Under the pieces are notes generated by a model. That model ran no database searches, had not been told where the DNA came from, and saw only the letters and a list, made by a program, of their open reading frames with translations. A DNA stretch of 64,000 bases, taken from Tubulanus polymorphus. Taxonomy: Eukaryota; Animalia; Nemertea. Each line of letters starts with the position of its first letter. The first letter of the stretch is position 1. The stretch spans positions 4,922,231 through 4,986,230 of the forward strand of contig NC_134033.1 of NCBI RefSeq assembly GCF_964204645.1. The letters run 5' to 3'. The position numbers and the translations under genes are program-made. Shown here piece by piece: positions 581-64,000 of this stretch.

Positions 581-773
581 CAAATACGAGACTGTGCGCC
601 AGTTTGATGGGAGATTTTTTTTAGAAAATAATTTGACTCTGGATCAATTCGTCCACTTTTCACATTTGCGAATTCGTCATTACTCTGCAGCTACTCTTTA
701 GAGAGATGTCGCGCAAACTTGGAAAGAGTTAGAAATGTTTTTTTTTTGTTTTGAAGCGTGAATTGTGTTCAAT

Positions 774-3700: not shown

Positions 3701-6700
3701 ACTGTCTGGTGATTACACCTGAAAATCGACGCCTTCGCTTGAACAATATTCACATATTATCAGAACACGAATATCAAATTGACCGATGTTTTCTCAAGAT
3801 GCCATTGTCATGTGATCAGTATCTGAGTTTGATTAATCAGTTTCTTAATAACAGTCTCGTATTAAACACTGTAGATTTCACAGTTAATGAGTTTGGATTC
3901 TGGCAGGAACCACTAATAGTTAAACTACGTCGTAAATGTTTAGGAGTAAAAAAACTGAAAATATGCTGGGTTCCCTTGTCCCAACTGCGACTAAAGATCA
4001 ATGTAGACTCGTGCAGTCACCAAACTACCCGGGTTGGGCAGGGCGTACGATAAAATCTATTTCCTATAGATTCAAAAACCCGATCCAACAAAATGTATTT
4101 CAATATTACAGATTTATTGTCAAATTGATTGGATCAGTTTCATGCGCAACAGCCAAATCCTACGAGAACGATCCAATTATTTTGATACAATTAATGGAAT
4201 ATAACCCCTTCTTTGATGGAAGATTATTTAACCTATTCACGCTCAACATGAGACAAAAATATGTGAAAATAACGCGGTTCGTAGACTTATATTTTATAGT
4301 TTAATAGAAAATGCTTTGCGTTTTGAAGTGAAGAATACAATCCCAACCTTTCAAATACAATATACTTTACACGAGTCGTTACCGATTAATGATTTCGATG
4401 ATTTCTACTGCAAACACGGATTTCTGGATTCCGGAATTTCTTGCATCAAATTCATCAGAGATGAACGTCTGAATTGGGGTAACGCTGAAATATACTGTAG
4501 ACAGAAGTACGCGGGACATCTACTCAGTATCAACTCAGAACAAGAAATGATTTCCATCAAAAGATTATTCGCTAGAGAAAATCTCCAAATGGCGTACGCA
4601 TTAAAAACGCCCATAATGATGATTGGATTAAAATGGAAGGTAAAACTATTATGTACAAATGTGAATTGGAAAGGAAAGATTTTTAGAGAAGAAATAATAG
4701 ATTACCTTTTTTACGAAACAGAATGATGGTTATTACACGTGGACTGACGGTAAACCTTTGAGCTACACAGAGTGGTATAAACCTGTTATTAATGAAACGA
4801 TACCAGAAGTTATTCGAGGATTGATATCTCCGCTAAGAAAACAACCGATAAATGACGTCAATATGCCGTGTACGGCGATGATACTAAATAATCCACGAGG
4901 ATCAGCGAACTGGGTTCGATTCCCGTGTCAAATCGAGGAGACGCACACGACATTCATTTGTGAATTCGAGAGAATCGACATCAAACACAAACGCAATTCA
5001 GCGATAAACGATGCGAACAATTCAGTGAATCCCGAGGTTTACTGTAATAATGACAATCACTGTACGACTCGTTTCACACATCTGTGTAAGGAATCGGATG
5101 AACAAAGATGTACGTTCAATTCTCCTCGCTGTTATTCCCGGCACGAAAGGTGTATTTTAGAAAGGATGCCGATTGGTTTCCCGGTATGTAGAAATCTTGA
5201 ACACATACTCGCGTGTAATGACTTCGAATGTGCTGCTGGTACTGTAAAATGCCCGGCATCTTATTGTATACCAATCAGAAACGTTTGTGACGGTCGATCC
5301 GATTGTCCTAATTCAGAAGATGAACGAAACTGCGAGACTTGGTCCTGTCCGGGAATGTTTAAATGTGGCCAGGAAAATCGATGTATTCCGCAATCTGAAG
5401 TTTGCGACGGTGTCGTAAATTGTGAACATAACTCGGATGACGAGTCATACTGTAAGGTCGCGTGTCCTGAACGTTGTAATTGCCGGGGTCTTTTCATCGA
5501 TTGTGAAAATGCTCTTTTATCAGATATTACTGGTCGTTTTATAAAATCAACTCGAGTTTTGATTTTGTCGAATAACCGAGTCGTATTTAAGGAATCGACG
5601 TTTAACTCTTTCATTTATCTTCGTTTTCTCGATATTTCGGGCAATAATTTGTCTTACATCGTTCCCAATGCGTTTTCTAATCTAAACAATCTTTACACAT
5701 TAGACCTTACTCACAACCGCGTAGCATCATTATCTGCTAATACATTCGCTGGTTTGATCGGTTTAAAAGAACTATTTCTTGTCGGAAATCCGCTGCAACA
5801 TTTTAAAGACGGTAGTTTCTTAGGTCTGACATCACTTCCTGCCCTCGATCTTCACGGACTTTCTATATCGGTTCTCGGCGAAAATGTATTTAAAGGTTTA
5901 TCCGCATTACAGTCGTTAAATATCAGCAGTAACAAAATTCATCACATTTCAAGCTTTGCTTTTTCTGGATTGGTTGGACTTGAAATTCTTGACCTCGTCA
6001 ACAATTTTGGAGTAATATCCGTAGAAAGAAACGTTCTAGGCGATCTTATATCAATGAAATACTTATCATCGTATGCTTACAAATTCTGCTGCATGGCGCC
6101 GAATGTTGACCGATGTCTTCCCGAAGCTGATTTTCAACCTGCTCTGACCTGATAGGTAACACTGTACTGAGAGCCATCATCTGGATGATCGCATCTTTCA
6201 GTTTTCTCGCTAACAGTATCGTTATCTTATTTCGTATTCAAGCTTTGCGGATGAAATCCTCCGGAACACGTAACACATCTTCAGATATCCTTATCATTAA
6301 TATTGCCGGTTGTGATTTTCTGATGTCGGTCTAATTGGTTTTGATCGCAGGAGCTGACCACGCGTTCAAGGGTATCTATTATCTGAATTCTGAAACCTGG
6401 ACGAATAGCTCATTATGCCGTGTCACCGGGGTTATTGTCACCGTTTCGTGCGAAGGTTCCTTGACTTTTCTCTTAATTCTAACGCGTCAGAGATATTCAA
6501 ATATCGTCAACCCGTTTTCTGAAAGTCCAATTATAACTTGAAAATACGTTATCGGTATTTGCTGCATTTGTTGGCTCGTTATTAGCACAGTTTCTATTCT
6601 ACCGCTGTCATCGTCGTCTTACTTCGGAGACAATTTTTACGGTACAACCGGAGTTTGTTTGCCTATGAATTTTCTAACGATTGACGTCAATGGCTGGGAC

Positions 6701-15154: not shown

Positions 15155-15637
15155 ACTTCTTTTAATTCTAACTCGTCAGAGATATTCAAATATCGTCCAC
15201 CCGTTTTCTAGAAGTCCGATTATAACTCCGAAATATGTTATCGGTATTTGCTGTATTTGTTGGCTCGTTATAAGCACAGTCTCTATTTTACCGCTGTCAT
15301 CGTTGTCTTACTTCGGAGACAATTTTTACGGTACAACTGGAGTTTGTTTGCCAATGAATTCACTGACGATCGACGTCAATGGCTGGCACTATTCATTCGC
15401 TATTTTTGCCTTGTTCAATACGACCATATTGGCTACGATAATGACGTCGTACGCTCAGATGTATAGACTCGTATCTGGAAGTTCGTCGGGCTCGGTTAGA
15501 GCCGAACCTACCGATTTGATTTTAGCTCGAAGGAGTTTATTAATCAATCTTTGTTATTTATTTTGCTGGTTACCGATAATAATCGTTCAGTTTTGCGCTG
15601 TATTTTCGGTCGAGATACCGAACCAGGTGGCCGCTTG
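15155..15637 (+). pseudogene. Orphan fragment of the GRL101-like 7TM region (end of TM3 to start of TM7)
   Basis: Near-identical to copy D at about 62692-63176, with small indels; ends abruptly after NQVAA. Confidence 0.92.
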
Positions 15638-21200: not shown

Positions 21201-21689
21201 TTAACCATCTTAAATCTCTGAGTGTAAAATCAGACGGATTTCTCGTGATTCTGTGCGTTTTAACGACATCGGATTTTGTAAGATCGTATTTGAAAATAGA
21301 ATTTGAAGTGAAATCAATGACAATATCAGACGTCCACGTCAACAAGCCAAGGATATCGGTAAGTTGACTACAGTCATTTGTAAATTAGCTTTGTATGTTA
21401 TAATGATAATAATAATGATAGCGATAACGATAACGATAGCGATAGCGATAGCGGAAGCGACAACACTCCACAATAGATAATATGTTCATTCTGTATTCGT
21501 AAAGTGAGCTTCTAAAATTGCAGAAAAAAAGCTCTATTGTGCATTTATAGACTTTGTCAAATCTTTTGATTCGGTGTGGCGAGCAGGGTTGTGGCAAAAG
21601 CTTTTGAATAATGGTATTAACGGAAATGTATTTATTCTCATACGTAATGTGTATAGTAACGTTAATACTGTAATGTATGGAAGCTCGAA

Positions 21690-23218: not shown

Positions 23219-26200
23219 GCTACAGCGGTAGTGATAGCGGCACCGACAGCGACAGCAACTACCACAACGACAATGACAATAAAAATAGTAATTATAATAA
23301 TATTAATCATGATAATAATATGAGTGAGACTGAGGAATTCTTTCGTTTTTATTCTTTCTTCGAATCGATCCAATTAAAATGTGTACACGAAATGTTTTCT
23401 AGATACGATTCGTGCCATTCTATCTTAAGACCTGTTACAAATCATAATTTTGCGAGCGGAAATTATGTTGATACACACGAGATTTTCAGATAGTCGCATT
23501 ATATTATTATCGTCATCGTTATACATTTTCAGGTAGTGAAGGAGGTGAAATCATTAAGCCGCGTGTTCCCGAGTTCAAAGAATACATTGTATCATGTAAC
23601 TACATTACAACTAAAGTGGAAAGTGAACATCTATGAAAAACAGTTGAAACTAACAGTGCTATCAGAAAACTGTGATCGAGCTGGTTTTTATATATTTGAT
23701 GGTAGTAATCTCACAGCTAGACGCTATGGTCCGTATTGTCCTGGTTCATACTACGGTCGATCTGTCGTCAGCCTGATTACATCAGGTGGACCGGTTACTG
23801 TAGTAGCGTACGCTTATTACTATAACAATCAGTTAACAGTTAATCGTCCTGACCAGTCGTATCTTATGTACGCCCCTATCGATTGTGATGGTTATGTTCT
23901 AAAGGAAGAAGAACGTCAGATCAATATGACGTCACACTGTCTCGTGATTACACCTGAAAATCGACGCCTTCGCTTGAAAAATATTCGCGTATTATCAGAA
24001 CACGAATATCAAATTGACCGATGTTTTCTCAAGATGTCATTGTCATGTGATCAGTTTCTGAGTTTGAGGAATCAGTGTCTTGATAACAGTCTCGTATTAA
24101 ACACTGTCGATTTCGCAAGTGATGGGTTTGGATTCTGGCAGGAACCACTAATAGTAAAACTACGTCGTGAATGTCTAGGAGTGAAAAAAGCAGCTAGTAT
24201 TCGAGGTTCCCTTATCTTATCTGCGACTCCTGATAAATGTGGACTCGTGCAGTCACCGAAGTACCCGGGTCGGGCAGGACGTACGTTCAAATCAATTGTC
24301 TACAAATTTGAAAAAACGATACAACAAAATACATTAGAATATTACAGCATATATCAATATTACAGATTCATTGTAAAATTTATCGGATCAGTTTCATGTG
24401 ATACAAACAACGTATTTGATTATGATCCAATCATTCTAATGCAAATGATGATTTACAGCCACTTCCTCGACGGAGTCGTTAGAAACCGACATGAAACTAA
24501 AATATGTGAAAATAACGCGGTTCGTGGACTCATATATCATAGTTTGAAAGGTTGGGACCTGCGTTTTGAAGTAATTAATAGCATTCCAACGTTTCAAATA
24601 CAATACACTTTACACGAGTCGTTACCGATTAAAGATTTCGATAATTTCTACTGTAAAAAAGGATTCCTGGATTCCGAAATTTCCTGCATCAAATTCATCA
24701 GAGATGAACGTCTGAATTGGGAGAACGCTGAAATATACTGTAGACAGAAGTACGCGGGACATCTACTCAGTATCAACTCAGAACAGGAAATGATTTCCAT
24801 CAAAAGATTATTCGCTACAAAACTTCTCCGAATGGCGTACACATTAAAAGCGCTTATAATGATGATTGGATTGAAATGGCAGGTAAGTCTAATGAATAGA
24901 GATATTAATTTGGAAAGAAATATTTTTGAAAAAGAAATATTATGTATTTCTAATTTTCTTCATGTAACAGAATGATGGTTATTACACGTGGACTGACGGT
25001 AAACCATTGAGCTACGCAGAGTGGTATAAACCTGTTATTAATGAAACAATACCAGACGTTATTCGAGGATTGATATCTCCGCTAAGAAAACAACCGATAA
25101 ATGACGTCAATATGCCGTGTACGGCGATGATACTAAATAATCCACGAGGATCAGCGAACTGGGTTCGATTCCCGTGTCAAATCGAGGAGACGCACACGAC
25201 ATTCATTTGTGAATCTGAGAGAATCGACATCAAACACAAACACAATTCAACGATAAACGATGCGAACAATTCAACAAATACAGACTTAAATAAAACCATA
25301 CATCAAATGATTCCCGATGTTACTTTAATCAATTCAACCTGTCCAATGGGTTGGGTAACTATTACCGGACAATGTTATCGAATACTAACCGACTGGAAAA
25401 ACAATCGAGGTTTGAATATTCGGAGTGCTAGAGAAATGTGTCAAAGCATCCGTGCCGAAAAAGTGAGAATCACCTCAAATACGGAAAGCGATATGAAAAA
25501 TTTAATTAGCAAATTTCAATATCGACATCAATATGGCGCTATACTGACAATGGACCACGACGGATTCAAAGTTTACAAACCACTAGTGACCAGGAATGAA
25601 ATTACTCATATTCAATCGGTTAAATGGTTATTGAAACCTTTCGATAATATAACACATAAAGTGCATTCCGTGTTGTGTACCTATAATGTAACTGGAGAAG
25701 AGTTAGCTTCTGGAAGCGGTTGTAAATCGTGGCAGTTTGAATGTAACGATCAAAGATGTATCAGCGACCATCGCGTATGTGATACCAGACACGACTGTCA
25801 ACACGGCGAAGATGAACTAAATTGTACGGATATCAATTTACACAGTCAGTTCCGCTGTAACGATGGACAGGTTATATCGATTAGCGGTTTCTGTGACTTT
25901 ATGAGAGATTGCGTCGATGGCTCGGATGAGAACTCGTGCTATCACCCACCGTGTTTATCTACGCAATATCGCTGTTCCAATCACCAATGTATCGATAGTT
26001 ATAAACGATGTGAAGGACTAGCCAACTGTAAAGACGGTTCCGATGAGATCGGATGCACTGCTGTACTTTGTCAGGGGTTCTCGTGCGCGGACGGTGAATG
26101 TATTAGTTCTCAGTTGTATTTGGATGGTGTCGTGGATTGTAGCGGAAGTCTCGAAGAAGACGAATTGGTAACTAATATGACAGTGAATCCCGAGGTTTAC

Positions 26201-35928: not shown

Positions 35929-36092
35929 ACTTTTCTCATGATTCTCAACTCGTCAGAGATATTCAAATATCGTCAACCCGTTTTCTAGAAGTCCAATTAT
36001 AACTCCGAAATACGTTATCGGTATTTGCTGCATTTGTTGGTTCGTTATAAGCACAGTTTCTATTCTACCGCTCTGTCATCGTCGTCTTACTT
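35929..36092 (+). pseudogene. Second orphan GRL101-like 7TM fragment (TM3-TM4)
   Basis: Matches FLxILTRQRYSNIVNPFSRSPIITPKYVIG...SSSY, with indels; ends about 35 bp before the upstream homology block of copy C. Confidence 0.9.
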
Positions 36093-36641
36093 GGATTGAG
36101 TTGTTTCCTCAGAAAGTCTGCAGAGAAAAAGTCCTTACCCGCCACAATCAGATATCCATGCGCTTCGCTTTGCTTCAACTCAGTTATCATATTGACTGTA
36201 GAGTGTGAGAATTGTCAAAACAGATGTTGACGAAGTGTTTTACAGAGACGCAGAATATATAAATTAATATAGAAAAATAATTATCGAATATTGTCAAATC
36301 TGGTTCGGATATCAAAACGCAGTTCGAAAGCTACAGTCAATATTTTTAGCGAAATAATTGCGCATGATTATAAACACGATATATTGAAACACGTCTAAAT
36401 TTAGAAACCGCGGTAATTACAGCGAAACCGAAAACAGATGGAAGTTTCACAAAATACGAGACTGGTGCCAGTTTGATTTGGTCTTTACAAAATAATTGGA
36501 CACTGGATCAATTCGTCAACATCTGCCATTGGCAAATTCGTTGTAACTTCGTTATAACTGCAGCTATTCTTTTGAGAAATGTCGTGCGAACTTGGAAATA
36601 GTTAGAAATGTGTTTGTTTTGAAGCGTGAATTCTGCTCAAT

Positions 36642-39600
36642 ATGCAGCGAATGAAAGCGTTGTTCGTAGTTTTACTGATCGCTCGCGGAGACTGTATATT
36701 TACGCGGGCTGATCGCGCAAACTCTGTCGAGGAAGCCGCGTCTGTTACAGTCAGTTCATCTTGTAAGAAGACTCAATACTCCGTCGATTCTACGTCCGGT
36801 TACATCGTTTCACCGAACTATCCCTCGTTAGTGCACGGTGTTGAATGTCGTTGGTTCGTCGACAGCTCTTTACCGGGAAGTTTTCTCGTTCAAGTTTACA
36901 ACGACATCGAGCCGTCGATATTCTGTAACGAGAACTGCCCTCTCATCGGTAAATCCGACAACAAACTCTGCGCTACCAGTAGAAAACCACTTGAAATCGG
37001 CAGTAACGATTTGATTTCGTTGTTGTTTAGGAGTAACGTCGATGGAGCGCGAGGTAGTCGGGTTCATATCATATATCGTTTTCTAGAACAGAGTCGCTTG
37101 AAAATCGAATATAAATGCATTATTTATTAACGGTGGAGTAAAAGAATTACCAACTCAAACAGGTTATAAATTCACGATTTCTACCTCTCGGTGTATATTG
37201 TTGTTAGAATGGATCGGGAAGCCAGACGGGTTTGCAATGAATTTAACGTTTATACAGTTAGATTTCAGATTAAAACCAGGAGAGTATCCAATGAAAACTC
37301 GTCCTCAAATTTACGACGGATGGAACAGCTCCAGTGAACCTATAGCTCTTATACTAGAACAAACCGGACATCCACCTTCGTCGTGTTATACTAAAACTTA
37401 TAAAGCACGTATTGAATTCATTTCAACTAGATCTTGGTTTCAGTCGCAGTTACTCATGCGAGTTTACAAAATATAATTTTGGAACATCTCTAACCCGTTA
37501 ATTCAAATCTATAATAAATCAGGACTGCTCGCTACAATTGATGGAATACCACATATAGTAACTAAGTCTAAACACTTATACTGCTGGTCTATCACAGTCG
37601 ATGTTCTGCAGTACGTCATCTTCAACTGGACACGTGATCTCGTCTCGTCACCAGGTGTCGTTGGTGTATATAAACAGGAAGGGTTACGTATTGTGAGAAC
37701 TGATATTTTACTCAGTTTTAACCATCTTATATCTCTGAGTGTAAAATCAGACGGATTTCTCGTGATTCTGTGCGTTTTAACGACATCGTATTTTTTTAAA
37801 TCATATTTGAAAATAGAATTCGAAGTGAAATCAATGAAAATATCAGACGACCACGTCAACAAGCCAAGGATATCGGTAAATTAAAAACAATGATTTGTAA
37901 ATTAGGTTCGTGTAATAGAATCATTGTAATAATCTATGATTTTGATGGCGATTTGACGAGTGAAACTTTGCCGAGAAACTTGGAATAACAACGTTATGTG
38001 TGACCCAAAGCACATGTTGTTTACGCGGAGTAATTATGATGATTAGTGGAAGAATTTAAATTATTTTGGATTACAACTAGAACTATTATCGATATTTTCA
38101 GTTTGTGAGTGGTTTGAAATTGTCGTATTGTAAACATTCAATACTGTAATCAATTCTCTTATATTTCAGCATTCAATCACAAAGTTTGTGATTGAATGCT
38201 GAAATATAAGAACTCAATATCAGCTAATCGATTGTTCCCAAGATCAAAGACTACATTTTATCGTGTAACTACATTACAACTAAACTGGAAAGTGAACATC
38301 TATGAAGAACGGTTGAAACTAACAGCGCTATCAGAAAACTGTGATCGAGCTGGTTTTTATAATTTTGATGGTATAATTTCACAGCTAGACGCTATGGTCC
38401 GTATTGTCCTGGTTCATACTACGGTCGATCTGTCGTCAGCCTGATTACATCAGGTGGACCGGTTACTGTAGTAGCATACGCTTATTACTATAACAATCAG
38501 TTAACAGTTGGTTGTCCTAGCAGGTCATCTCTTGAATTTGCTCCTACTGATTGTGATGGTTATGTTCTACAAGAAGAAGAACGTCAGATCGATATGACGT
38601 CACACTGTCTCGTGATTACACCTGAAAATCGACGCCATCGCTTGAAAAATATTCACATATTATCAGAACACGAATATCAAATTGACCGATGTTTTCTCAA
38701 GATGACATTATTATGTGATCAGTTTCTGAGTTTGAGTAATCAGTTTCTTAATAACAGTCTTGTATTAAACATTGTAGATTTCACAGTTAATGAGCGGTTC
38801 CTGAACTTCGCTGAAAAAGCTGAAACACTGAAAAGCTGAAACGCTGAAATAAAAACGCTGAAATTTCAGGGAATTTCCGAAAAACGCCAAAATTTCAGGG
38901 AATTCCCGAAAAACGCTGAAATCGTGCTAGGTACCGACAATACACGTTTTGAAATGTTTTCCGGGCTGGTGTCCGCTGCCGAGTCCTGAACCGTGTTTTA
39001 TGCTCTACCTTCGGTTACAGAGACATGCCTTAAGGTCGTCGTCATGACCGACTTGATCGATTGCGGATTGCGTGGATTGTTAGATGTGTTTTTTGCCATA
39101 GTTTTATGTGCATATACCGGTACGGTCTAACAATGAAGTTATCACTTCATTTGAATAAATTCTTAATCACAGTAATATTAATTCACAATATTTTTTCTTA
39201 TGTTTGGTGATTTCTTGCAACTTATCATTGCCAAGTCTCATACAAGTAGTAGCTGAATGAAAGTACAGTTAGGCTGAACCTGATAACCCAAATTAAGTGC
39301 TAGCATGGAACTAATGATTATTTTGATTCTATTTTCGGTGTCATTGAAATTCGTTAATAAAGGTTTTAACCGTCATAGTATACTGTACTTAGCATTGCTA
39401 CAATTGGGTGCCATATTTCTACAATTTCTACAAGGAGGAAGGAATCTTTAAGTGTCTTTGTTCCCGGGTAGGGTACGGGGTAAAACCTGGTTTACTTTCT
39501 CCTTCGACTTGCCGGAGACTACTATCTGCAATGTATTGCATGCTTTGATGTGTCTGGCCTATAGGAGTCGAACGATATTTTTTTCCCATACACAGGCATG

Positions 39601-41439
39601 GCTTTAGTGTAGATGAAGGCTAGGCACTGCACATTGTGGATTGACTGGAACTCTTAACTCACAAAATTAAACGAGTCAACAAGAAAGATCCAATAATTGG
39701 ACATTTGTCTAACTATATTATTTAACAGCTTGAAATAACACATTCTGCAAGAGTATACAAAGGAAATCAGTTCTTACATTATATCAGAATCAATAGTTCG
39801 CTTAACTCTGGCTAGAATTCTGGTTCCATTGCTTCATATTATTGAAATAGCATTCGAATAGCCATCTTATTTTTAAAAATTGTGTCGTTCAGCTATCCTG
39901 CTGCAAATTTCGCAGTTGAAGTTTACTGGTGCCATCTGATTTCTCAGTATCTCAAAAAATTTGCACATTCTAAGCCTGAATCTAAAAATAGAAAAAGGTG
40001 CATTTTAGTCGGATATAAAAGAATAGTGGCTAATACACCCTGGACTATATAGCCTATGGGGTGGGCCTAGTTTGAAAGCACTGAGGTCCGAGAGAACAGC
40101 ACTTAGTAAATAAATACTGAAATTAAACTTACAAAACACCCAGTACTTGAGATGATGTACTTGACAAGAAGTGTCACCAGCTAAGCATATCAACTTTGTC
40201 TATGACTCCTCCTTTTATAGATTCAGTAGTAGTCTAAAAATAAGAATCGGTACATTTTTCTAACAGTCGGTATGTCATTTCTTCAAAAAAACTAATTATT
40301 ATCACGCCACAGCAAATAAATTATTCACAGTTGTTGAATGGTTAGCCCGATTTAGATTAATTGGTTGACGCTAATCAGTATGACCCATACGTAGGGGCCT
40401 ACTGCATGCCATTGGCGTCAATCCATTCCATTCCATTCCACAGTGAATTAAAAAGAAATTTAGTTAGATCCCTTATGTCCAAAAGCTGCATCATTTATAT
40501 AACTAACTGTCAAATTTAATTTACCTCCTTCAGAGAATACCATAGTCCGTGGCCCATCAACGTGTTGACAAAAGAAAAGTTGCTCCATGTTTTATACATG
40601 AACGTTCAAATAAGATATTTTGCGTCTTGCAGGGAATATTGAGCATAGTGTTTAAGTTGGCTTGCACGGTTTGTGAATGGGTTTTCCTCATTATGCTGCC
40701 TGTATGCATTAAAAATCCGGATTTCAAGCGAATTAATTTGTCCAACAAGTGGCCCTCTAGAAGTATACTCCACACATACTGTCCATGCGTGTCTCTGTAA
40801 CCGAAGGTAGAGACTAAAACACGGTTCAGGACTCGGGAGCGGACACCGGCCCGGAAAATATTTCAAAACGTGTATTGTTGGTACCTAGCACGATTTCAGC
40901 GTTTTTCGGTAATTCCCTGAAATTTCGGCGTTTTTCGGAAATTCCCTGAAATTTCAGCGTTTTTATTTCTGCGTTTCAGCATTTCAGTGATTCAGCTTTT
41001 TCAGCGAAGTTCAGGAACCGGTTAACGAGTTTGTATTCTGGCAGGAACCACTGATAGTTAAACTACGTTGTCAATGTCGGGGAGTGAAAAAAGCGCATAA
41101 GTTTTGGATTTGCCGGTTCCCGTCTCCCAGTTGCTACTAAAGATAAATGTGGACTCGTGCAGTCACCGAACTACCCGGGTTCGGCAGGAAGTACATCTAA
41201 ATCTTTTTTCTACGAATTTGAAAAACCCGATACAACATAATATATTTCAATATTTCAGATTTATCGTCAAATCTATTGGATCAGTTTCATGTGAAACAAA
41301 CAACGTGGATGCGAATGATCCGATCATTTTGATACACAGCTGATAAAGTAATACCTCTTCCAAAATGGAAAACTGTTCAAATTTATAAGGACCCAACACA
41401 AAACTTTAATATGTGAAAATAACGCGGTTCGTGAACTTA
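36642..41439 (+). pseudogene. GRL101-like LGR receptor copy C (3'-truncated, disabled)
   Basis: Exon 1 is 36642-37875, with a disruption and stop at about 37128 and TAA at 37474. Exon 2 starts at about 38170-38230, has a frameshift at about 38372 and a 2.2-kb transposon insertion. Homology stops at about 41439 after ENNAVR; the CTL, LDLa, LRR and 7TM regions are absent. Confidence 0.9.
38795..41020. mobile_element. Non-autonomous Mutator-like (MULE) DNA transposon, 2226 bp
   Basis: About 230-bp TIRs (38795-39025 / 40790-41020) begin cggttcctgaacttcgctgaaaaagctgaa and contain internal sub-repeats. 9-bp TSD gttaatgag / gttaacgag; the uninterrupted site cagttaatgagtttgg is present in copy A. 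No intact transposase ORF. Confidence 0.88.
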
Positions 41440-42057
41440 GTGTAACTAGATTTTTTTTAGTAAGTATGAGCTTTGTCGAGAACTTTATGGTAATTTTATG
41501 AGACAAGGAATTCTTTACATAGATAAAGAAGGATTTTCAACAAGGATAGACACAAAATAGATATAATTGTCGAACAGATATGTAAATAGATATAATATAG
41601 TATTATGCACAATCAGACTTTATGCTGAAAAACCATCGTGAAAATTACAGCTGGCATCAACTGTGTGTAACGAATCACAAAAGACGAGAATGATAAAGTT
41701 AGAAAAGTCACTTTTTATGTTAAAAGTTCATTGGTTATCTCGCTTGCCGCAAACCCTTTACGTTTTTGGCATCGTTTGATATCTATGACGTCATGCCAAT
41801 GCTAATTCAATTGATCGAAAGTCGTTACAAAAAAGTGCCGACGCTTCTCATTTTTGTAGTAACTACAAATTGAATCTCCGTTTACGTTGAATATTAGACA
41901 CAGCTGAAAATGACTCAATATAATGTTTCGATTATTCCCTACAACAAAGCGTCGCCAGATTTATGATTTAATGGTCCAAAAAAAATATTTCATCGCATAT
42001 TTGCTCATTAATTGCTGCTTATATGCATGTATAACTGGCTTAGATTCATAAATCTAA

Positions 42058-44722: not shown

Positions 44723-45658
44723 TTACTTAATGCAGGCGAATTTCGAACAGAAATATACGCGAATTTCTCGTCCTAGTAAAAGATACATGTAAAAGTTAAT
44801 TGAATAATTGCTCAAAAGTAATTGACTAAATATATCTAAAAGAAATTGCTTTTGATACGCCGAGATTGGCAGTAATACAGTTATTGTAGACGGCATCGTA
44901 AGTAAATATAGCGAATGCGATTGAAACTGTTACAAGCATTATTGTTGTTCGTTTTGATTTTGTAGTTTTGTGATCGGACAAACGCATTGGACCTCTGACT
45001 AACTGAACTATTATAACAATACTTGATATGATGATCACTGTTAATGCAACAAGATACACGAATATAGTTAATATAAGAAAATAGATGATGTGGTCTGATA
45101 ACTCGTAATAACATCCAGAAATCTGGCCGGAGAACTGCATGATTACTGTTGGTTGAATACCTGTTACCAATGCGTTCATTACGAAAATGATAACAATCAT
45201 GTATCGGGCGAATCTCGGTGTACATATCAAACGAGCCGTGAACGGAAAGAGCACAACTGCCGCACGTTCTAGAAATATCGCTACTATTAACCACGAACTG
45301 TTAGAGGCCATAAATGATATCAAACATTCATAGATTTTTCAAGTTATCAATGAATTCAACGACCGCTGTTCACGTGCACCAGAAAATATTGCAATACAGG
45401 CATCAGTGTAGAATTGGTACAAAACGTAAAATCACTGATAGACAAAACCAACAGATAGTTGGCGTAAGAAAAACAGCGGAATCTACGACTTATCATTATC
45501 AGGAAAGTAGTTGCGTTTCCAAAGGCACCCAGCAGAAACAAGATGAGCAAAATGACCATAGATCCCGTTCGATTCGCACCCGACTTGTTTGCAGTAGACA
45601 TCAGAACGATGTTACTGTTATATGGTCGGCCGACATTCTGAACCTCTGTAGAATTCAT
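44723..45658 (-). pseudogene. Full-length intronless class A GPCR pseudogene, paralogue of 12957-13800
   Basis: MNST N-terminus; GAFGNATTFLIMISRRFR..SYANYL; SNSSWLIVAIFLERAAVVLFPFT; KTTKSKRTTIMLVTVS; LSNYSINFYMYLLLGREIR. Several frameshifts. Confidence 0.88.
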
Positions 45659-56268: not shown

Positions 56269-57060
56269 TGATAAAAATGAAAAAAATGCATTTTCAAAAT
56301 TTGTACGGTTATTGAAGAATGGTCGGCGAAATTTTGAATGGTCGGCGATATTTTCAAACCTTAATCGTGTGCGAGGTAGAAACGATAAATAAAGAAACTT
56401 TAAGATTTGAATTTGTGGTTTAAAGTTATTGGCATCGGTCATAGTCCGTTAGAAAATTTTTCGATGATAGATTTTGATCCCGTTTCGATCAAAGTTAAAT
56501 AATGATCTTCCACGCATTTAGTTGGTATTTTTATACGCTATCAGTGGAATAGTGTTTCTTCAAAATGATCCCGCCGAACAAGTCCTAACACGCCACATTC
56601 AGATAGATACATGCGCTTCACTCAGTTATAATATTGACTGAAGAGTGAATTGTCGAAACAGATATTGACGAAGTGTTTTACAGAGACGCAGAATATTTTG
56701 CAGTAACGGCAGAAAATATTACCGATGAAAAACTGGCCGCAGTTCGGGAGCAACATTAAATATATTTTTAGCGAAATAATTGCGCATGATTATAAACACG
56801 ATATAGTGAAAGACGTCTAAATTTAGAAACCGCGGTAATTACAGCGAAACCGAGAACAGATGAAAGTTTCACAAATACGAGACTGGTGCCAGTTTGATGG
56901 GAGATTTTTTTTTTACAAAATAATTGAACTCTGATCAATTCGCCAAATTCTGACATTCTGACAACTCGTCATTACTTTGCAGCGACTCTTATGAGAAATG
57001 TCGCGCAAACTTGGAAATAGATGTAAATGTGTTTGTCTTGAAGCGTGAATTGTGTTCAAT
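56269..57060 (+). repeat. Upstream region of copy D, homologous to positions 1-773 upstream of copy A
   Basis: Colinear similarity from tgataaaaatgaaaaaaatgcatttt to the start codon; probably extends beyond the left window edge for copy A. Confidence 0.9.
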
Positions 57061-60000
57061 ATGCAGCGAATGAAAGCGTTGTTCGTAGTTTTACTGACCG
57101 CTTGCGGAGACTGTATATTTACGCGGGCTGATCGCGCAAACTCTGTGGAGGAAGCCGCGTCTGTTACAGTCAGATCATCTTGTAACAACACTCAATACTC
57201 CGTCGATTCTACGTCTGGTTACATCGTTTCACCGAACTATCCGTCGTTAGTGCGCGGTGTTGAATGTCATTGGTTCGTCAACAGCTCTTTACCGGGAAGT
57301 TTTCTCGTTCAAGTTTACTACGACATCGAGCCGTCGATATTCTGTAACGAAAACTACCTTCTCGTCGGTGAGTCCGACAACAGACTTTGCGCTTCTGGAA
57401 GAAAACAACTAGATATCCGTAGTAACGATTTGATTTCGTTGTTGTTTAGGAGTAACGTCGATGGAGCGCGAGGTAGTCGGGTTTCTATCATATATCGTTT
57501 TGAAGAACAGAGTCGCTTGAAATTGATACAACATAAATGCAACAAATATTCAGTAAAAGAATTACCAACTCAAACAGGTTATGAATTCGTGATTTCTACC
57601 CGGCGATGTCAATTGTTGTTAGAATGGATCGGGATGATAGACGGGTTTGCATTGAATTTGACGTTTATACAGATAGATTTCAGATTGAGACCAGGCGAGG
57701 ATCCGATGAAAACTCGTCCTCAAATTTACGACGGATGGAACAGCACCAGTGAACCTATAGCTCTTATACGAGAACAAACCGGGCATCCACCTTCATCGTT
57801 TTATACTAAAACTAATAAAGCACGTATTGAAATCATTTCGAGTATACATTGGTTTAAGTCGAAGTTACTCGTGCAAGTTTACAAAATATCAGATTGGAAC
57901 ATCTCTAACCCGTTAATTCAAGTCTATGGTAAATCAGGACTGCTCACTACAATTGATGGAATACCACATATAGTAACTCAGTCTAAACACTTATACTGCA
58001 GGTCTATCACAGTCGAGGTTCTGCAGTACGTCGTCTTCAACTGGCCACGTGATCTCATCTCGTCACCAGGTGTCGTTGGTGTATATAAACAGGAAGGGTT
58101 ACGTATTGTGAGAACTGATATTTTACTCAGTTTTAACCATCTTAAATCTCTGAGTGTAAAATCAGATGGATTTCTCGTGATTCTGTGCGTTTTAACGACA
58201 TTGGATTTTTTAAGATCGACTTTGAAAATAGAATTTGAAGTGGACTCAATGACAATATCAGACGTCTACGTCAACAAGCCAAGGATATCGGTAAGTTTTA
58301 CATAATGTTTGTAAATTCGTTTTGTATAATAGAAATAATATAAAAATCTTTGACTTTGCTTATTACCTTGACCCGTTTAACCAGCGAAATCTCGGATACC
58401 CACATTATGTTTTCCATCATTTTGACATAATCCATCAGATAACCTGCAGCTGAATGCCAATAAACAATGAACTCTTCACTGTCACTTTGTCGTCAACTAT
58501 CTACTAGATAACTAACTCTAACCAACTTTTTAGCATTCACCTCAAGAAAAGCGTCTTTACACATACAAATTATAATAATTAGTTGGAGAGTTCATACAGA
58601 CCTTTCAAAGTATGATGCATATTTTTATCAATTTTAGGTGAATCTGATATTTGCTGAATTGTTCCCGAGATCAAGGAATACATTTTATTTTGTAACTACA
58701 TTACAACTAAACTGGAAAGTGAACATCTATGAAGATCAGTTGAAACTAACGGTGCTATCAGAAAACTGTGATCGAGCTGGTTTTTATATATTTGATGGTA
58801 GTAATTTCACAGCTAGACGCTATGGTCCGTATTGTCCTGGTTCATACTACGGTCGATCTGTCGTCAGCCTGATTACATCAGGTGGACCGGTTACTGTAGT
58901 AGCATACGCTTATTACTATAGCAGTCAGTTAACAGTTGGTGGCTCATATCTTAGATTCGCTCCTACTGATTGTGATGGTTATGTTCTACAGAAAGAAGAA
59001 CGTCAGATCAATATGACGTCACACTGTCTCGTGATTACACCTGAAAACCGACGCCTTCGCTTGAAAAATATTCACATATTATCAGAACACGAATATCAAA
59101 TTGACCGATGTTTCCTCAAGATATCATCGCCATGTGGTCAGTTTCTGATTTTGAATAAGTTTCGTTATAACAGTCTAGTATTAAATACTGTTATTGAGTT
59201 CGGATTCTGGAAGGAACCAATAATAATCAAACTACGTCGTAGATGCCTGAGTGTGAAAAAAGCATATGGATTTGTACTTGCCGGTGACCGTTTTCCAGTT
59301 ATTACTAAAGATAAATGTGGACTCGTGCAGTCACCGAACTACCCGGGTACGAAATTTTCATACACATCTATTTTCTACACATTTCGAAACCCGAGCAGTC
59401 AAAATGTATTTCAATACTATAGATTTATCATCAAATACATTGAATCAGTTTCATGTGAAACAAACAAAAGGGGTAAGCACGACCCACTAACACAAATACA
59501 AGTGATAACTTACAACCATTTCCTTAATGAAAAAAATTTCAAAATTATTTTAGCTCAACATGAAACAAAAATTTGCGAAAATAATGCAGTTCGCGGTCTT
59601 ATATTTTACAGTTTAAGTGATAACAACCTGTACGTTGAAACAAAAAATTATGTCCCCATATTTCAAATACAATACTCTTTACACGAGTCGTTACCGATTA
59701 AAGATTTCGATAATTTCTACTGTAAACAAGGATTTCTGGATTCCGGTATATCCTGCATCAAATTCATCAGAGATGAACGTCTGAATTGGGAGAACGCTGA
59801 AATTTACTGTAGACAGAAGTACGCGGGACATCTACTCAGTATCAACTCAGAAAAGGAAATGATTTCCATCAAAAGAATATTCGCTACAGAACTTCTCCGA
59901 ATGGCGTACACACTAAAAGCGCTCATAATGATGATAGGATTAAAATGGAAGGTAAGACTATCATGTACAAATGTTAATTGGAAAGGAAAGATTTTTAGAT

Positions 60001-63000
60001 AAGAAATAATAGATTTCCTTTTATTTACAAAACAGAATGATGGTTATTACACGTGGACAGACGGTAAACCTTTGAGCTACACAGAGTGGTATAAACCTGT
60101 TATTAATGAAACGATACCAGAAGTTATTCGAGGATTGATATCTCCGCTAAGAAAACAACCGATACATGACGTCAATATGCCGTGTACGGCGTTGATACTG
60201 AATAATCCACGAGGATCAGCGAACTGGGTTCGATTCCCGTGTCAAATCGAGGAGACGCACACGACATTCATTTGTGAATCTGAGAGAATCGACATCAAAA
60301 ACAAACACAATTCAACGATAAACGATGCGAAAAATTCAACAAATACAAACTTAAATAAAACCATAGATCAAATGATTCCCGATGTTACTCTAATTACTCA
60401 AACCTGTCCAAGAGGTTGGGTAACTTTTTCCGGACAATGTTTTCAAATACTAACCGACTGGAAAAACAATCGAGGTTTGAATCTTCGGGGTGCTAGAGAA
60501 ATGTGTCACAGCATCCGCGCCGAAATAGGAAGAATTACTTCAAATACAGAAAGCGATATGAAAAATCTTGTCAGCAAATTTCAATATCGACATCAATATG
60601 GCGCTACACTGACAATGGAACTCGACGGATTTAAAGTTATCAAACCAATGGTGATCAGAAATGAAATTACTTATATTCAATCAGTTATATGGTTATCGAA
60701 ACCCTTCGATGATACGAAAGATAAAGTGCATTCCGTGTTGTGTACCTATAATGTAACTGGTGATGAGTTAGCTTCTATAAGCGGTTGTAAATCGTGGCAG
60801 TTTGAATGTAACGATCAAAGATGTATCAGCGACCATCGCGTATGTGATACCAGACACGACTGTCAACGCGGTGAAGATGAACGCAATTGTACGGATATCA
60901 ATTTACAGAGTCAGTTCCGCTGTAACGACGGACAGGTTATATCGATTAGCGGTTTTTGTGACTTAATAAGAGATTGCATCGATGGCTCGGATGAGAACTC
61001 GTGCTATCATCCACCGTGTTTATCTACGCAATATCGCTGTTCCAATCACCAATGCATCGATAGTTATAAACGATGTGACGGACTAGCCAACTGTAAAGAC
61101 GGTTCCGATGAGACTGAATGCACTGCCGAACTTTGTCAGGGGTTCACGTGCGCGGACGGTGAATGTATTAGTTCTCAGTTGTATCGGGATGGTGTCGTGG
61201 ATTGTAGCGGAAGTCTCGAAGAAGACGAATTGGTCACTAATATGACAGTGAATCCCGAGGTTTACTGTAATAATGACAATCACTGTACGACTCGTTTCAC
61301 AGATCTGTGTAAGGAATCGGATGAACAAAGATGTTCGTTCAATTCTCCTCGCTGTTATTCCCGACAAGAAAGGTGTATTTTAGAAAGGACGCCGAATGGT
61401 TTCCCGGTATGTAGAAATCTTGAACATATACTCGCGTGTAATGACTTCGAATGTGCTGCTGGTACTGTAAAATGTCCGGCATCTTACTGTATACCAATTA
61501 GACACGTTTGTGACGGTCGATCCGATTGTCCTAATTCTGAGGATGAACGAAACTGCGAGACTTGGTCGTGTCCGGGAATGTTTAAATGTGGCCAGGAAAA
61601 TCGATGTATTCCACAATCTGAAGTTTGCGACGGTGTCGTAAATTGTAAACATAACTCAGATGACGAATTATACTGTAAGGTCACGTGTCCTGAACGTTGT
61701 AATTGCCGGGGTCATTTCATCGATTGTGAAAATGCTCTTTTATCAGATATTACTGGTATTTTTACAGAATCAAGTCGGGTTTTGATTTTGTCGAAGAACC
61801 GAGTCGAATTTAACGAGTCGACGTTTAACTCTTTTATTTATCTTCGTTTTCTCGATATTTCGGATAATAATTTGTCTTACATCGTTCCCAACGCATTTTC
61901 TAATCTAAACAATCTTTATACATTAGACCTTACTCACAACCGCATAACATCATTATCTGCTAATACATTCGCAGGTTTGATCGGTTTAAAAGAACTATTT
62001 CTTTTCGGAATTCCGCTGCAACATTTAGAAAACGGAAGTTTCCGAGGTTTGACGTCACTCACTGTTTTGGATCTTAAAGGACTTTCTATATCGGTTCTTC
62101 GTGAAAATGTATTTAAAGGTTTAGCCGCATTACAGTCGTTAAATATCAGCAGCAACAGAATCCATTATATTTCGAGCTTTGCTTTTTCTGGATTAGTTGG
62201 ACTTGAAATTTTAGACCTCGTCAATAATTCCGAGGTAATATCCGTTGATCGAAACGTTCTTGTTGATCTTACATCATTGAAATACCTCGCTTCCGATACT
62301 TACAAATTTTGCTGCATGGCACCGAATGTTGACCGATGTCTTCCCGGAGCTGATCAATTTTCGACCTGTTCTGACCTGATGGGTAACACTGCACTGAGAG
62401 CCATCATCTGGATGATTGCATCTTTCAGTTTTCTCGGTAACAGTATCGTTCTTTTATTTCGAGTTCAAGGTTTGCGGATAGCATCCTCCGGAACACGTAA
62501 CAAATCTTCAGATATCCTCATTGTAAATGTTGCCGGTTGTGATTTTCTGATGTCGGTCTATTTGTTTTTGATCGCAGGAGCTGACCATACGTTCAAAGGC
62601 GTTTATTATCTGAATTCTGAAACCTGGACGGATAGCTCATTGTGTCGTCTCGCCGGGGTTATTGTCACCGTTTCGTGCGAAGGTTCCTTGTCTTTTCTCT
62701 TAATTCTAACACGTCAGAGATATTCAAATATCGTCAACCCGTTTTCTAGAAGTCCGATTATAACTCCGAAATACGTTATCGGGATTTGCTGCATTTGTTG
62801 GCTCGTTATAAGCACAGTTTCTATTCTACCGCTGTCATCGACGTCTTACTTCGGAGACAATTTTTACGGTACAACCGGAGTTTGTTTGCCTATGAATTTA
62901 CTGACGATCGACGTCAATGGCTGGCTCTATTCATTCGCTATTTTTGCCTTGTTTAATACGGCTATATTGGCTATGATAATGACGACGTACGCTCAGATGT

Positions 63001-63302
63001 ATAGACTCGTATCTGTAAGTAGGTCGGGCTCGGGTAGAGCCGATCCTACCGAACTGGTTTTAGCTCGAAGGAGTTTAGTAATCAATCTTTGTAATTTATT
63101 TTGCTGGTTACCGATAATAATCGTTCAGTTTTGCGCCGTATTTTCGGTCGAGATACCGAACCAGGTGGCCGCTTGGCTGGCCGTTCTATTTTTACCGATC
63201 AACTCGTCTCTTAATCCGCTTCTTTATACAATACTTACTATCGATATGAAATCTATTCGTGAACGCAATAAACGACGACTTGGATTGACAGCTAGCAAAT
63301 AA
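57061..63302 (+). CDS. Intact giant GRL101-like leucine-rich-repeat GPCR (SP-CUB-like xN-CTLD x2-LDLa x6-LRR-7TM), 1936 aa; exons 57061-58290, 58638-59951, 60036-63302
   Basis: All three exons are open and join in phase 0 (tcg|gtaagt...ttttag|gtg; aag|gtaaga...aacag|aat). Splicing rebuilds the CTLD motif MIGLKWK/NDGYYTWTDG. Other motifs: CUB SGYIVSPNYP..C.W; LDLa FxC..G.CI....CD...DC.DGSDE; LRRs; hinge YKFCC...DQFSTCSDL; TM7 LPINSSLNPLLY. Confidence 0.92.
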
Positions 63303-64000
63303 ACAATATAACGCTGCATCTATATTCGTGTAGTCACGTTCGAATCCGATCTATTGACACCGTTTCCTTTTTCCAAAACGTTACGATTCAAATTGTTCGA
63401 ATCGATTGATGTTCTAACGAGATAAAAAGTAATTCAAGTAATGCGATTTAATCGGTTTCCGAATCCCGTGTAGTTCCTGTTTATTGCTTTCACAAATAAT
63501 ATCAGATCACCTGATATCTCTACCCTTAGTGGTTTTCACATAAAATGAAAATAATTTGACATTAAAAAGTTTTATTGAAAATGAACCAGAAATTCTTCTA
63601 TTTTTTTAGAATAGTTTGATAAATTTTTGGAGTTGTTGGGAATGGAATAGAATACTACTCTGAAATTGGAGTTGGAGTCCTGTTTGAAAATGGGGGAAAA
63701 TGAGCTTTTCGACTTCGAAAATAGAAATTTATATGAATATAAACTATAATTTCAGCCGATTTTGAGAGGTTCTTTTTGATATTTTTGGTGAAGCTCTTTA
63801 AAATAGTAGAAACTACTCTAAAATAGTATTCGTTGTCAGATCTGCAAACCAAACCAAATCAGCTCGATCAAACCAATCTGAGCAAATGTATCTTTTCGGT
63901 AAACCTTAATCGTTTATGCTAAATAAATACGTCTTAGAAAACGGTCCAATCTAAACCTATACATTGACTGGTAACGATTTATGACAATTTCTTTTTCCTA

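What the first reader, a model, noticed from the sequence alone, without database searches (positions are those of the whole stretch)
59260..59660. One CUB-like domain is hypervariable inside near-identical frameworks
Seen: flanking coding blocks are almost invariant between copies, but this domain differs at a large share of residues with in-frame indels. D: YTSIFYTFRNPSSQNVFQYYRFIIKYIESVSCETNKRGKHDPLTQIQVITYNHFLNEKNFKIILAQ. B (about 24180-24590): FKSIVYKFEKTIQQNTLEYYSIYQYYRFIVKFIGSVSCDTNNVFDYDPIILMQMMIYSHFLDGVVRNR. A (about 3950-4345): IKSISYRFKNPIQQNVFQYYRFIVKLIGSVSCATAKSYENDPIILIQLMEYNPFFDGRLFNL. C (41085-41440) is different again. Anchors (LVQSP.YPG, YRF, SVSC, DP, KICENNAVR) are kept. 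Inference: this is the specificity-determining domain, under diversifying selection or excluded from homogenising conversion, analogous to variable domains of immune receptors.
Basis: partly seen in the sequence, partly recalled or inferred. Interest (0 to 1): 0.8.

Follow-up and report, generated by a model that had tools for sequence, protein, structure and literature searches.

The report
Variable CUB domain in receptor family
An invertebrate (probably a ribbon worm) carries at least a hundred copies of a giant cell-surface receptor gene that copy-to-copy recombination keeps almost identical, except for one outer CUB-type domain that stays different in every copy and probably decides what each receptor recognises.

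Summary
In window copies A, B and D, DNA identity is 93-98% in the flanking exons and 67-76% at 59190-59650. The same segment is the variable one in 45 further open copies and in three other subfamilies of this genome.

The gene is a 1,936-residue GRL101-type receptor: signal peptide, CUB-like domains, C-type lectin, six LDLa repeats, LRRs and a 7TM. Copy D is intact. B has a frameshift in exon 1. A and C are pseudogenes.

Pfam and PDB sequence searches do not recognise the variable domain. Its model matches CUB structures, and it occupies the position of a true CUB domain in a Lineus relative.

- **Synonymous divergence** is also 3-4 times higher in the variable segment (dS 0.31 against 0.08-0.09) and is close to intron divergence. 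The main cause is therefore homogenisation of the flanks with escape of this segment.
- **Selection** across the domain is purifying (omega about 0.5), so this is neither decay nor a disordered linker.
- **Variable positions** evolve at omega about 1.
- **A few sites** show omega above 1. The signal is roughly ten times what recombination-only simulations gave.

The ligand and expression are unknown. This scan has reported the same family twice before on other windows of this genome (s1-500220, s1-500274).

The parts
57061..58290 (+). Copy D, exon 1 (410 codons): signal peptide, a weak CUB match and further beta-rich ectodomain
   Evidence: Open frame starting MQRMKALFVVLLTACG, GT donor at 58291. 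Pfam CUB E=0.009, below the family cut-off. Nearly invariant among 26 copies except a small patch at residues 258-266.
58291..58637 (+). Copy D, intron 1, used as a near-neutral yardstick
   Evidence: GTAAGT...TTTTAG boundaries. Only 66-80% identical among 28 copies, against 95-98% in the adjoining exons.
58638..59951 (+). Copy D, exon 2 (438 codons): two degenerate CUB-like modules (assigned by motif reading only), the variable CUB-like domain, and the start of the C-type lectin domain
   Evidence: Open frame, phase 0 at both ends. At least 96 matches in the genome, 88 without a stop.
59188..59657 (+). Hypervariable segment of copy D (exon-2 residues 184-340)
   Evidence: Entropy profile. dN 0.143 and dS 0.310, against 0.03-0.05 and 0.08-0.09 in the flanks. 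D's version has no relative closer than 24.8% nucleotide divergence among 45 copies.
59316..59684 (+). CUB-fold core of the variable domain (C227 to about L349)
   Evidence: AF2 domain model, pLDDT 64.8, eight strands. In VIA-align 2 the top 21 hits are all CUB domains, Z 6.8-9.2. Foldseek best hit is the MAp19 CUB, E 8e-4. Language-model look-alikes are CUB clusters. No Pfam or PDB sequence match.
59952..60035 (+). Copy D, intron 2 (84 nt)
   Evidence: GT..AG, phase 0. About 80% identical among 28 copies, against 94-98% in the exons on either side.
60036..63302 (+). Copy D, exon 3: rest of the C-type lectin domain, six LDLa repeats, LRRs, rhodopsin-type 7TM, stop codon
   Evidence: Pfam Ldl_recept_a 9e-35 (6 stretches), LRR_8 1e-46, 7tm_1 2e-23. 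Open frame of 1,088 codons.
24091..24595 (+). Variable segment of copy B (approximate limits); open, with a 7-residue insertion
   Evidence: B's exons 2 and 3 are open, but exon 1 changes frame near 20531.
3880..4345 (+). Variable segment of copy A (approximate limits); two frameshifts, pseudogene
   Evidence: Three reading frames are needed to follow it. A also has a 1.08-kb insertion at 1256-2340 and lacks the equivalent of D 60338-61246.
41021..41439 (+). Variable segment of copy C; frameshifts and stops, and the copy ends here
   Evidence: A 2.2-kb insertion separates it from the rest of exon 2 (38775-41021).

Best explanation
Copy D is an intact member of a GRL101-type LGR receptor family. 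At least 96 genomic places match exon 2 (380 first-look candidates), mostly in tandem arrays. Gene conversion together with purifying selection keeps most of each gene nearly identical between copies. One ectodomain module is the exception: a much-diverged CUB domain directly in front of the C-type lectin domain. It escapes homogenisation and keeps old, copy-specific sequence. Its beta-sandwich framework is under purifying selection. About fifty positions in loops and on alternate strand positions change freely and radically, and a few of them change faster than neutral. The likely consequence is that each paralogue presents a different CUB binding surface on a constant LDLa-LRR-7TM signalling unit, which would give a germline repertoire of sensors (chemosensory or immune). 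Shown here: the anatomy, the fold, the substitution pattern and the recombination. Inferred: that the variable surface binds ligand, and what the receptors sense.
For: Architecture and family: Pfam LDLa x6, LRR and 7tm_1. The best outside relatives share 33-37% identity, carry CUB, Lectin_C, LDLa, LRR and 7tm_1, and several are named GRL101-like. The Lineus longissimus relative has a true Pfam CUB immediately before Lectin_C. Fold. Family size and open frames: at least 96 matches, 88 without stops. Escape from homogenisation: dS 0.31 against 0.08-0.09. Introns are 66-80% identical while flanking exons are 94-98%. Flank divergence is nearly independent of variable-segment divergence and of genomic distance. 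PHI test p<=0.006 in all partitions. No mutational hot spot: the six pairs closest in the variable segment (0.2-2.5%) are more diverged in their flanks (1.5-3.5%). Constraint: omega 0.48; 68-70% of sites at omega 0.14-0.16; 34 of 161 sites significantly negative. Selection for change at a few sites: M2a against M1a gives 2dlnL 236.6 with 4.5% of sites at omega 5.6. The test remains significant in three sub-blocks with their own trees, 2dlnL 31.7, 75.6 and 37.2. Three null simulations with block-wise discordant trees gave only 18-28. Two sites pass Bonferroni in a site-wise test. Variable positions recur in independent subfamilies (Spearman 0.48, p 1e-10) and carry radical residue mixes such as R/V/F/S/N/D or F/R/G/Y/H.
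Against: No expression or splicing evidence was obtained: the runs that hold the locus behave as DNA, and the one presumed RNA run has nothing. No ligand or binding data exist. As a class, the variable positions evolve at about the neutral rate (pN/pS 0.88, CI 0.40-1.98), which fits tolerated drift as well as a mix of selected and constrained sites. Recombination inflates the M2a test, and I ran only three null replicates with simplified branch lengths. The structure models have only moderate confidence (pLDDT 55-75), and I had no coordinates, so surface exposure of the variable sites is inferred from strand periodicity and residue chemistry. Intron 2 lies between homogenised exons yet is only 80% identical, so conversion tracts must be short, or synonymous sites of the flanks carry some constraint of their own.
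Confidence: 0.55

Rival explanations
1. Tolerated drift without function. The CUB-like module is a spacer whose surface positions are unconstrained. It drifted past the similarity threshold for gene conversion and so kept diverging, while the rest of the gene stayed homogenised. The variability would then be a by-product and carry no specificity.
For: Class-level pN/pS at variable positions is 0.88-1.0. dS is raised along with dN. Recombination alone gives false-positive M2a tests of 2dlnL 18-28. Only two sites pass a strict site test.
Against: The observed M2a signal is about ten times the recombination-only null. The same positions vary in independent subfamilies. The changes are radical and concentrate in a few patches, while the rest of a 1,936-residue ectodomain and transmembrane protein stays nearly invariant. 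Most copies keep open frames.
Confidence: 0.3
2. Recent burst of duplication plus a local mutational hot spot (hypermutation) in this segment.
For: Flank synonymous divergence is uniform at about 3.5-3.9% at all distances from 10 kb to 2.8 Mb, which could look like a star-like burst.
Against: Introns are far more diverged than the flanking exons, so the copies are old. Pairs with near-identical variable segments have more diverged flanks, which is the opposite of what a hot spot predicts.
Confidence: 0.05
3. Decay: the divergence reflects pseudogenes losing constraint.
For: Window copies A and C are pseudogenes with frameshifts inside this very domain, and B has a frameshift in exon 1.
Against: 88 of 96 genomic matches have no stop over 438 codons. 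The analysis of 45 open copies gives omega 0.48 with 34 sites under purifying selection. Decay would not be confined to one domain.
Confidence: 0.05

Closest known systems
GRL101-type leucine-rich-repeat GPCRs (LDLa-LRR-7TM; first described in Lymnaea stagnalis), including the tandem expansions in apple snails
   Same: Same C-terminal architecture (LDLa repeats, LRRs, rhodopsin-type 7TM). Database relatives carry that name. Apple snails have 29-132 tandem GRL101 genes, many expressed in tentacles and labial palps (PMC6573481). A GRL101-like receptor is tentacle-specific in Charonia (PMC13403566).
   Different: Only 33-37% identical to the nearest outside proteins. Here the copies evolve in concert, with one hypervariable CUB module; the papers I read do not report this for the snail expansions. 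No expression data for this animal.
Lineus longissimus LOC135496567 (P0004) and similar CUB/Lectin_C/LDLa/LRR/7tm_1 proteins of Acanthaster, Dimorphilus and Ostrea
   Same: Same order of modules: CUB, C-type lectin, six LDLa, LRR, 7TM. The variable domain sits exactly where P0004 has its CUB.
   Different: P0004's CUB is a normal Pfam CUB (E 9e-16). The domain here is unrecognisable by sequence. A profile search of 1.84 billion representative proteins found only two marginal hits.
Canonical CUB ligand-recognition domains (C1r/C1s/MASP, cubilin, neuropilin, Kremen, the Gpr126/ADGRG6 CUB)
   Same: Same beta-sandwich fold by structure comparison, Z up to 9.2 over 100-113 residues. CG...SPNYPG start motif and a later cysteine pair. 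By motif correspondence (my inference), the most variable loops, after C273 and before the last strand, match loops L5 and L9, which form the Ca2+/ligand site of canonical CUBs.
   Different: The second cysteine of the first disulfide is missing. A 6-7-residue variable insertion separates the third cysteine from the conserved Asp. Ca2+ ligands were not verified.
Multigene receptor families with conserved frameworks and variable recognition parts shaped by gene conversion (MHC and KIR genes, plant NLRs with highly variable LRRs, snail FREPs); comparison from general knowledge
   Same: Germline repertoire, tandem arrays, mosaic evolution in which conversion homogenises most of the gene while the recognition part stays diverse.
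   Different: The carrier is a GPCR and the variable module is a CUB domain. There is no evidence of somatic diversification, and no evidence yet of allelic polymorphism or an immune role.

Membership tests
GRL101-type LGR (LDLa-LRR-7TM GPCR) | Rhodopsin-type seven-transmembrane domain at the C-terminus | tested here: met
   Pfam 7tm_1 E 2.1e-23, above the family cut-off.
GRL101-type LGR (LDLa-LRR-7TM GPCR) | Leucine-rich repeats preceded by several LDL-receptor class A modules in the ectodomain | tested here: met
   LRR_8 E 9.8e-47 (6 stretches); Ldl_recept_a E 9e-35 (6 stretches).
GRL101-type LGR (LDLa-LRR-7TM GPCR) | Sequence relatives annotated as GRL101 or GRL101-like | tested here: met
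   Hits named 'G-protein coupled receptor GRL101-like' from Ruditapes and Patiria. The best hits (E 1e-148 to 1e-133) have the same module set.
GRL101-type LGR (LDLa-LRR-7TM GPCR) | G-protein signalling on ligand binding | not testable with these tools
   Needs expression and cell assays.
CUB domain (Pfam PF00431) | Match to the CUB sequence profile | tested here: not met
   No Pfam hit even at E<=10 for residues 59241-59696. No PDB sequence hit with the single sequence or the profile. hhalign against the Lineus protein that contains a CUB gave probability 0.4%.
CUB domain (Pfam PF00431) | CUB beta-sandwich fold | tested here: met
   The top 21 VIA-align 2 hits are all CUB domains (Z 6.8-9.2, rmsd 2.7-3.4 A, 100-113 residues), then Z drops to 5.8. 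Foldseek gives CUB hits at probability 1.00 but E only 8e-4 to 2e-2. Model confidence is moderate (pLDDT 64.8).
CUB domain (Pfam PF00431) | Four conserved cysteines forming two disulfides, and the Ca2+-binding Tyr/Glu/Asp/Asp set of the ligand-binding subclass | tested here: inconclusive
   C227, C273 and C313 are invariant, and an extra invariant C203 lies upstream. The usual second cysteine is absent. Ca2+ ligands could not be assigned without a reliable alignment.
Receptor repertoire under diversifying selection | dN above dS at recognition sites after allowing for recombination | tested here: inconclusive
   M2a 2dlnL 236.6 against 18-28 in three null simulations, and two sites pass Bonferroni. 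Against this, class-level pN/pS is 0.88 and recombination is present.
Concerted evolution by gene conversion with a region of escape | Synonymous divergence of homogenised parts far below that of introns and of the escaping part, histories decoupled, recombination detectable | tested here: met

The most novel reading that the evidence does not exclude
A spiralian animal uses at least a hundred, perhaps several hundred, germline GPCR genes as a recognition repertoire. Specificity would be set by a hypervariable CUB domain kept diverse by selection, while gene conversion keeps the signalling chassis constant. That would be a new type of variable receptor system (chemosensory, self/non-self or immune) built on a GPCR rather than on Ig, LRR or lectin scaffolds.
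Probability: 0.3. Interest if true: 0.8.

Novelty: new variant of a known kind. Interest (0 to 1): 0.55.

Why it matters
Large tandem expansions of GRL101-type receptors are already known in snails and are suspected to be chemosensors. Which part of these giant ectodomains sets specificity is not known. This family points to one module, and gives at least a hundred natural variants of it on an otherwise constant chassis. That makes the question testable by domain swaps and ligand screens. It is also a clean natural example of mosaic concerted evolution, in which exons are homogenised while introns and one domain escape, in a phylum with almost no functional genomics.

Tried and rejected
- **Ancestral reconstruction (iqtree2 -asr):** I did not attempt ancestral sequences by any other route, and used likelihoods summed over ancestors instead.
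- **iqtree2 codon models:** too slow and timed out. I replaced them with my own GY94 code on FastTree topologies with proportionally scaled branch lengths. This is an approximation.
- **Folding the whole 438-residue exon:** poor result (pLDDT 39.8), because the paralogue alignment is almost invariant outside the variable domain. The flanking modules therefore remain without a fold assignment.
- **Profile search of 1.84 billion representative proteins with the variable domain:** two marginal hits, so the alignment could not be deepened.
- **Read laying for expression and allelic diversity:** uninformative. The contig runs cover intron 1 and so behave as DNA. The presumed RNA run holds nothing. 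In the one raw-read DNA run of another sample, D-specific stretches have depth 0-1 against about 7 expected at 98% likeness. That could mean absence of this copy, or a diverged population or cryptic species.
- **Hypermutation and pure-decay readings:** rejected and 9/49.
- **Joined spliced protein:** Exons were handled separately, and a natural read-through frame (L071) was used for the length-dependent word search.
- **Species name:** I did not verify it. The closest check was that published genome sizes of 313-358 Mb (PMC8468679) are roughly compatible with the 268-Mb assembly.
Full report
**What is in the window**

The window is eukaryotic: GT-AG introns, 35-40% G+C. It corresponds to G000:C9:4922231-4986230 in a 268-Mb assembly of 77 contigs. 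A self-comparison finds four head-to-tail copies of one large gene:
- A at 207-7143
- B at 19763-28192
- C at 36125-41439
- D at 56501-63400

Small 3'-end fragments of the family lie at 15157-15637 and 35930-36092.

Copy D is intact. Its three phase-0 exons are 57061-58290, 58638-59951 and 60036-63302, giving 410 + 438 + 1,088 = 1,936 residues starting with a signal peptide. The other copies are damaged:
- B has a frame change in exon 1 near 20531.
- A needs three frames to read through the domain in question, carries a 1.08-kb insertion, and lacks about 900 bp of the LDLa region.
- C has frameshifts, stops and a 2.2-kb insertion, and ends after the domain.

**What the gene is**

Exon 3 carries six LDLa modules, leucine-rich repeats and a rhodopsin-type 7TM. 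The C-type lectin domain spans intron 2 and gets a partial Pfam match. The first module of exon 1 is a sub-threshold CUB (E 0.009).

A word-indexed search with a natural read-through frame of a paralogue (L071) found nothing closer than 33-37% identity. The best hits come from Acanthaster planci, Lineus longissimus, Dimorphilus gyrociliatus and Ostrea edulis. They carry CUB, Lectin_C, LDLa, LRR and 7tm_1, and some relatives are named GRL101-like. In the Lineus protein the module order is CUB (Pfam E 9e-16), Lectin_C, LDLa x6, LRR, 7TM. The domain under study sits directly before the lectin domain, which is the CUB position.

**Is the variable domain a CUB?**

By sequence it is not recognisable:
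- Pfam gives no hit even at E<=10.
- PDB sequence searches with one sequence and with a 64-sequence profile are blank.
- hhalign against the Lineus protein finds nothing.
- A profile search of 1.84 billion representative proteins gives two marginal hits.

By structure it is a CUB:
- The only part of the exon-2 model with usable confidence, residues 203-350, gives 21 top matches that are all CUB domains (Gpr126, MASP-1/3, MAP-1, Kremen, cubilin, TSG-6, spermadhesin, neuropilin). Z is 6.8-9.2 over 100-113 residues, then falls to 5.8.
- A domain-only model (pLDDT 64.8) gives the MAp19 CUB as best Foldseek hit (E 8e-4) and many CUB hits at probability 1.00.
- Language-model look-alikes are CUB clusters.
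- The CG..SPNYPG start and the later cysteine pair fit a CUB as well.

I therefore accept "CUB-like" on fold and position, not on profile membership.

**The observation at family scale**

The genome holds at least 96 matches to exon 2 (380 first-look candidates), and 88 have no stop. I fetched 70 loci and aligned 67 open frames.

Within the near subfamily (45-47 copies on C9 and C22), column entropy is close to zero outside residues 184-340. Inside that segment it peaks in a few patches:
- 186-193
- 210-222
- 237-243
- 276-281
- alternate positions of a long beta-hairpin at 289-306
- 326-330
- 336-338

Thirty of the forty most variable columns lie in this segment, and their residue mixes are radical. 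Subfamilies on C12, C6 and C8 show the same segment as least conserved. Exon 1 and the first 470 residues of exon 3 are nearly invariant in 26-27 copies.

**Why the domain is variable**

Nei-Gojobori estimates over all near-subfamily pairs:

| Partition | dN | dS |
|---|---|---|
| N-terminal flank | 0.053 | 0.076 |
| Variable segment | 0.143 | 0.310 |
| C-terminal flank | 0.033 | 0.093 |

Synonymous divergence is therefore raised 3-4 fold as well.

- **Copy age.** Intron 1 is only 66-80% identical between copies and intron 2 about 80%, while the adjoining exons are 94-98%. The copies are old, and the flanking exons are far below neutral divergence.
- **No distance effect.** Flank synonymous difference is 3.5-3.9% at every genomic distance from 10 kb to 2.8 Mb.
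- **Decoupled histories.** Flank divergence rises only from 2.5% to 6.2% while variable-segment divergence goes from under 3% to over 30%. The pairs most alike in the variable segment (0.2-2.5%) have more diverged flanks (1.5-3.5%). This also rules out a local mutational hot spot.
- **Recombination.** The PHI test detects it in all three partitions (p<=0.006).

The main cause is mosaic concerted evolution: conversion plus purifying selection homogenise the exons, while the introns and this segment escape. Intron 2 is short and lies between homogenised exons, yet it is only 80% identical. Conversion tracts must therefore be short, or the flanks carry some extra synonymous constraint. I leave this open.

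**Selection inside the domain**

iqtree2 would not give ancestral states and was too slow for codon models. I wrote a GY94 likelihood on FastTree topologies with scaled branch lengths.

Results for the variable segment:
- M0 omega is 0.48.
- M1a against M2a gives lnL -6691.1 against -6572.8 (2dlnL 236.6), with 68% of sites at omega 0.16, 28% at 1 and 4.5% at 5.6.
- Sites with posterior above 0.99 are 186, 187, 193, 215, the column after 237, 278 and 338.
- Three sub-blocks with their own trees remain significant, at 2dlnL 31.7, 75.6 and 37.2.
- A site-wise alpha/beta grid test finds 34 negatively and 7 positively selected sites at p<0.05. Two pass Bonferroni: residue 187 (p 2.9e-6) and the column after 237 (p 4.3e-6).

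Results for the flanks:
- The C-terminal flank shows no signal.
- The N-terminal flank shows one (2dlnL 128) at small patches, residues 102-106 and 164-165.

Recombination inflates such tests. I therefore simulated the alignment three times under M1a with a different tree for every 20 codons, and analysed the result the same way. The false signal was 2dlnL 18-28 with omega2 about 2. That is well below the observed 236.6, although it is similar in size to the sub-block values.

In a test that avoids both circularity and deep trees, I defined variable positions on the far subfamilies and scored nine mutual-nearest pairs of the near subfamily:

| Site class (defined on far subfamilies) | pN/pS | 95% interval |
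|---|---|---|
| Variable | 0.88 | 0.40-1.98 |
| Intermediate | 1.00 | 0.45-2.85 |
| Framework | 0.28 | 0.12-0.69 |

My reading is a folded, constrained domain whose exposed positions are on average free to change, with a handful that probably change under positive selection.

**Where the variable sites sit**

I had no model coordinates, so this part is inference. In the domain model the variable patches fall in four kinds of place:
- the loop after the SPNYPG motif
- the loop after C273
- the loop before the last strand
- every second residue of the 284-312 hairpin

Motif correspondence with canonical CUBs places the second and third of these at loops L5 and L9, the usual Ca2+/ligand site. Alternation on strands and charged, aromatic and small residue mixes fit a solvent-exposed face, not the core.

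**What I could not show**

I have no evidence on expression. The runs holding the locus cover intron 1 and so are DNA. The one presumed RNA run holds nothing. A raw-read DNA run of another sample lacks the D-specific stretches at 98% likeness, which could reflect copy-number variation or a diverged population.

I have no evidence on ligand or tissue. In gastropods, GRL101 expansions are expressed in tentacles and taken as chemosensory (PMC6573481; PMC13403566). I found no paper describing a hypervariable CUB module or concerted evolution in this family.

**Earlier notes of this scan**

Two follow-ups on other windows of the same genome describe the same family. One reads it as variable-loop sensors (s1-500220). 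The other reads it as old, weakly constrained segments left by recombination (s1-500274). My tests put the truth between them: recombination explains most of the contrast, and a small selected component remains likely.

Another note names the animal as the ribbon worm Tubulanus polymorphus (s1-508762). I did not verify this. The Lineus hit at only 36% identity shows that the genome is not a close relative of Lineus longissimus.

**Verdict**

- This is a new variant of a known kind: a lineage-specific GRL101-type expansion with a CUB module as the variable part.

Noticed in passing
window 1256-2340 (ORF 1411-2112): A 1.08-kb insertion interrupts exon 1 of pseudogene copy A. It holds a 233-residue open frame with no Pfam match. 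Possibly a mobile element.
   Followed up: partly
window 38775-41021: A 2.2-kb insertion splits exon 2 of copy C just before its variable domain. Its content was not examined.
   Followed up: no
window 12960-13697 (+) and 44826-45323 (-): Two further open frames with rhodopsin-type 7TM matches (E 1e-7 and 6e-10) lie between the big receptor copies. They could be other GPCR genes or fragments.
   Followed up: partly
window 57832-57858 (exon 1 residues 258-266 of copy D): A second, much smaller hypervariable patch sits in an otherwise invariant exon 1. Similar small patches lie at exon-2 residues 102-106 (with indels) and 164-165; these also score as omega>1 in M2a.
   Followed up: partly
L021 (G000:C9:2942114, +) and L029 (G000:C9:2281873, -): Two copies 660 kb apart on opposite strands differ by 0.2% in the variable segment but by 1.5% in the flanks. 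L010 (C22) and L013 (C9) behave alike. This could be recent transfer of the variable block, or flanks overwritten by other copies. The 139-kb contig C22 may be an alternative haplotype.
   Followed up: partly
L071 3884-8707 (G000:C9:2848000-2857999) and two more copies: In some paralogues the 81-nt intron 2 has no stop and is in frame. Exons 2 and 3 then read as one open frame of about 1,600 residues.
   Followed up: partly
window 58376-58569, 59346-59733, 60510-60703, 61674-62449: In the raw-read DNA run of another sample with the same species label, stretches specific to copy D have depth 0-1 against about 7 expected at 98% likeness, while conserved stretches pile up reads from paralogues. 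This could be copy presence/absence polymorphism or a diverged population.
   Followed up: no
window 59952-60035 and equivalents in 28 loci: The short intron 2 is only about 80% identical between copies, although the exons on both sides are 94-98% identical. Homogenisation seems to stop at exon edges. No explanation was tested.
   Followed up: partly
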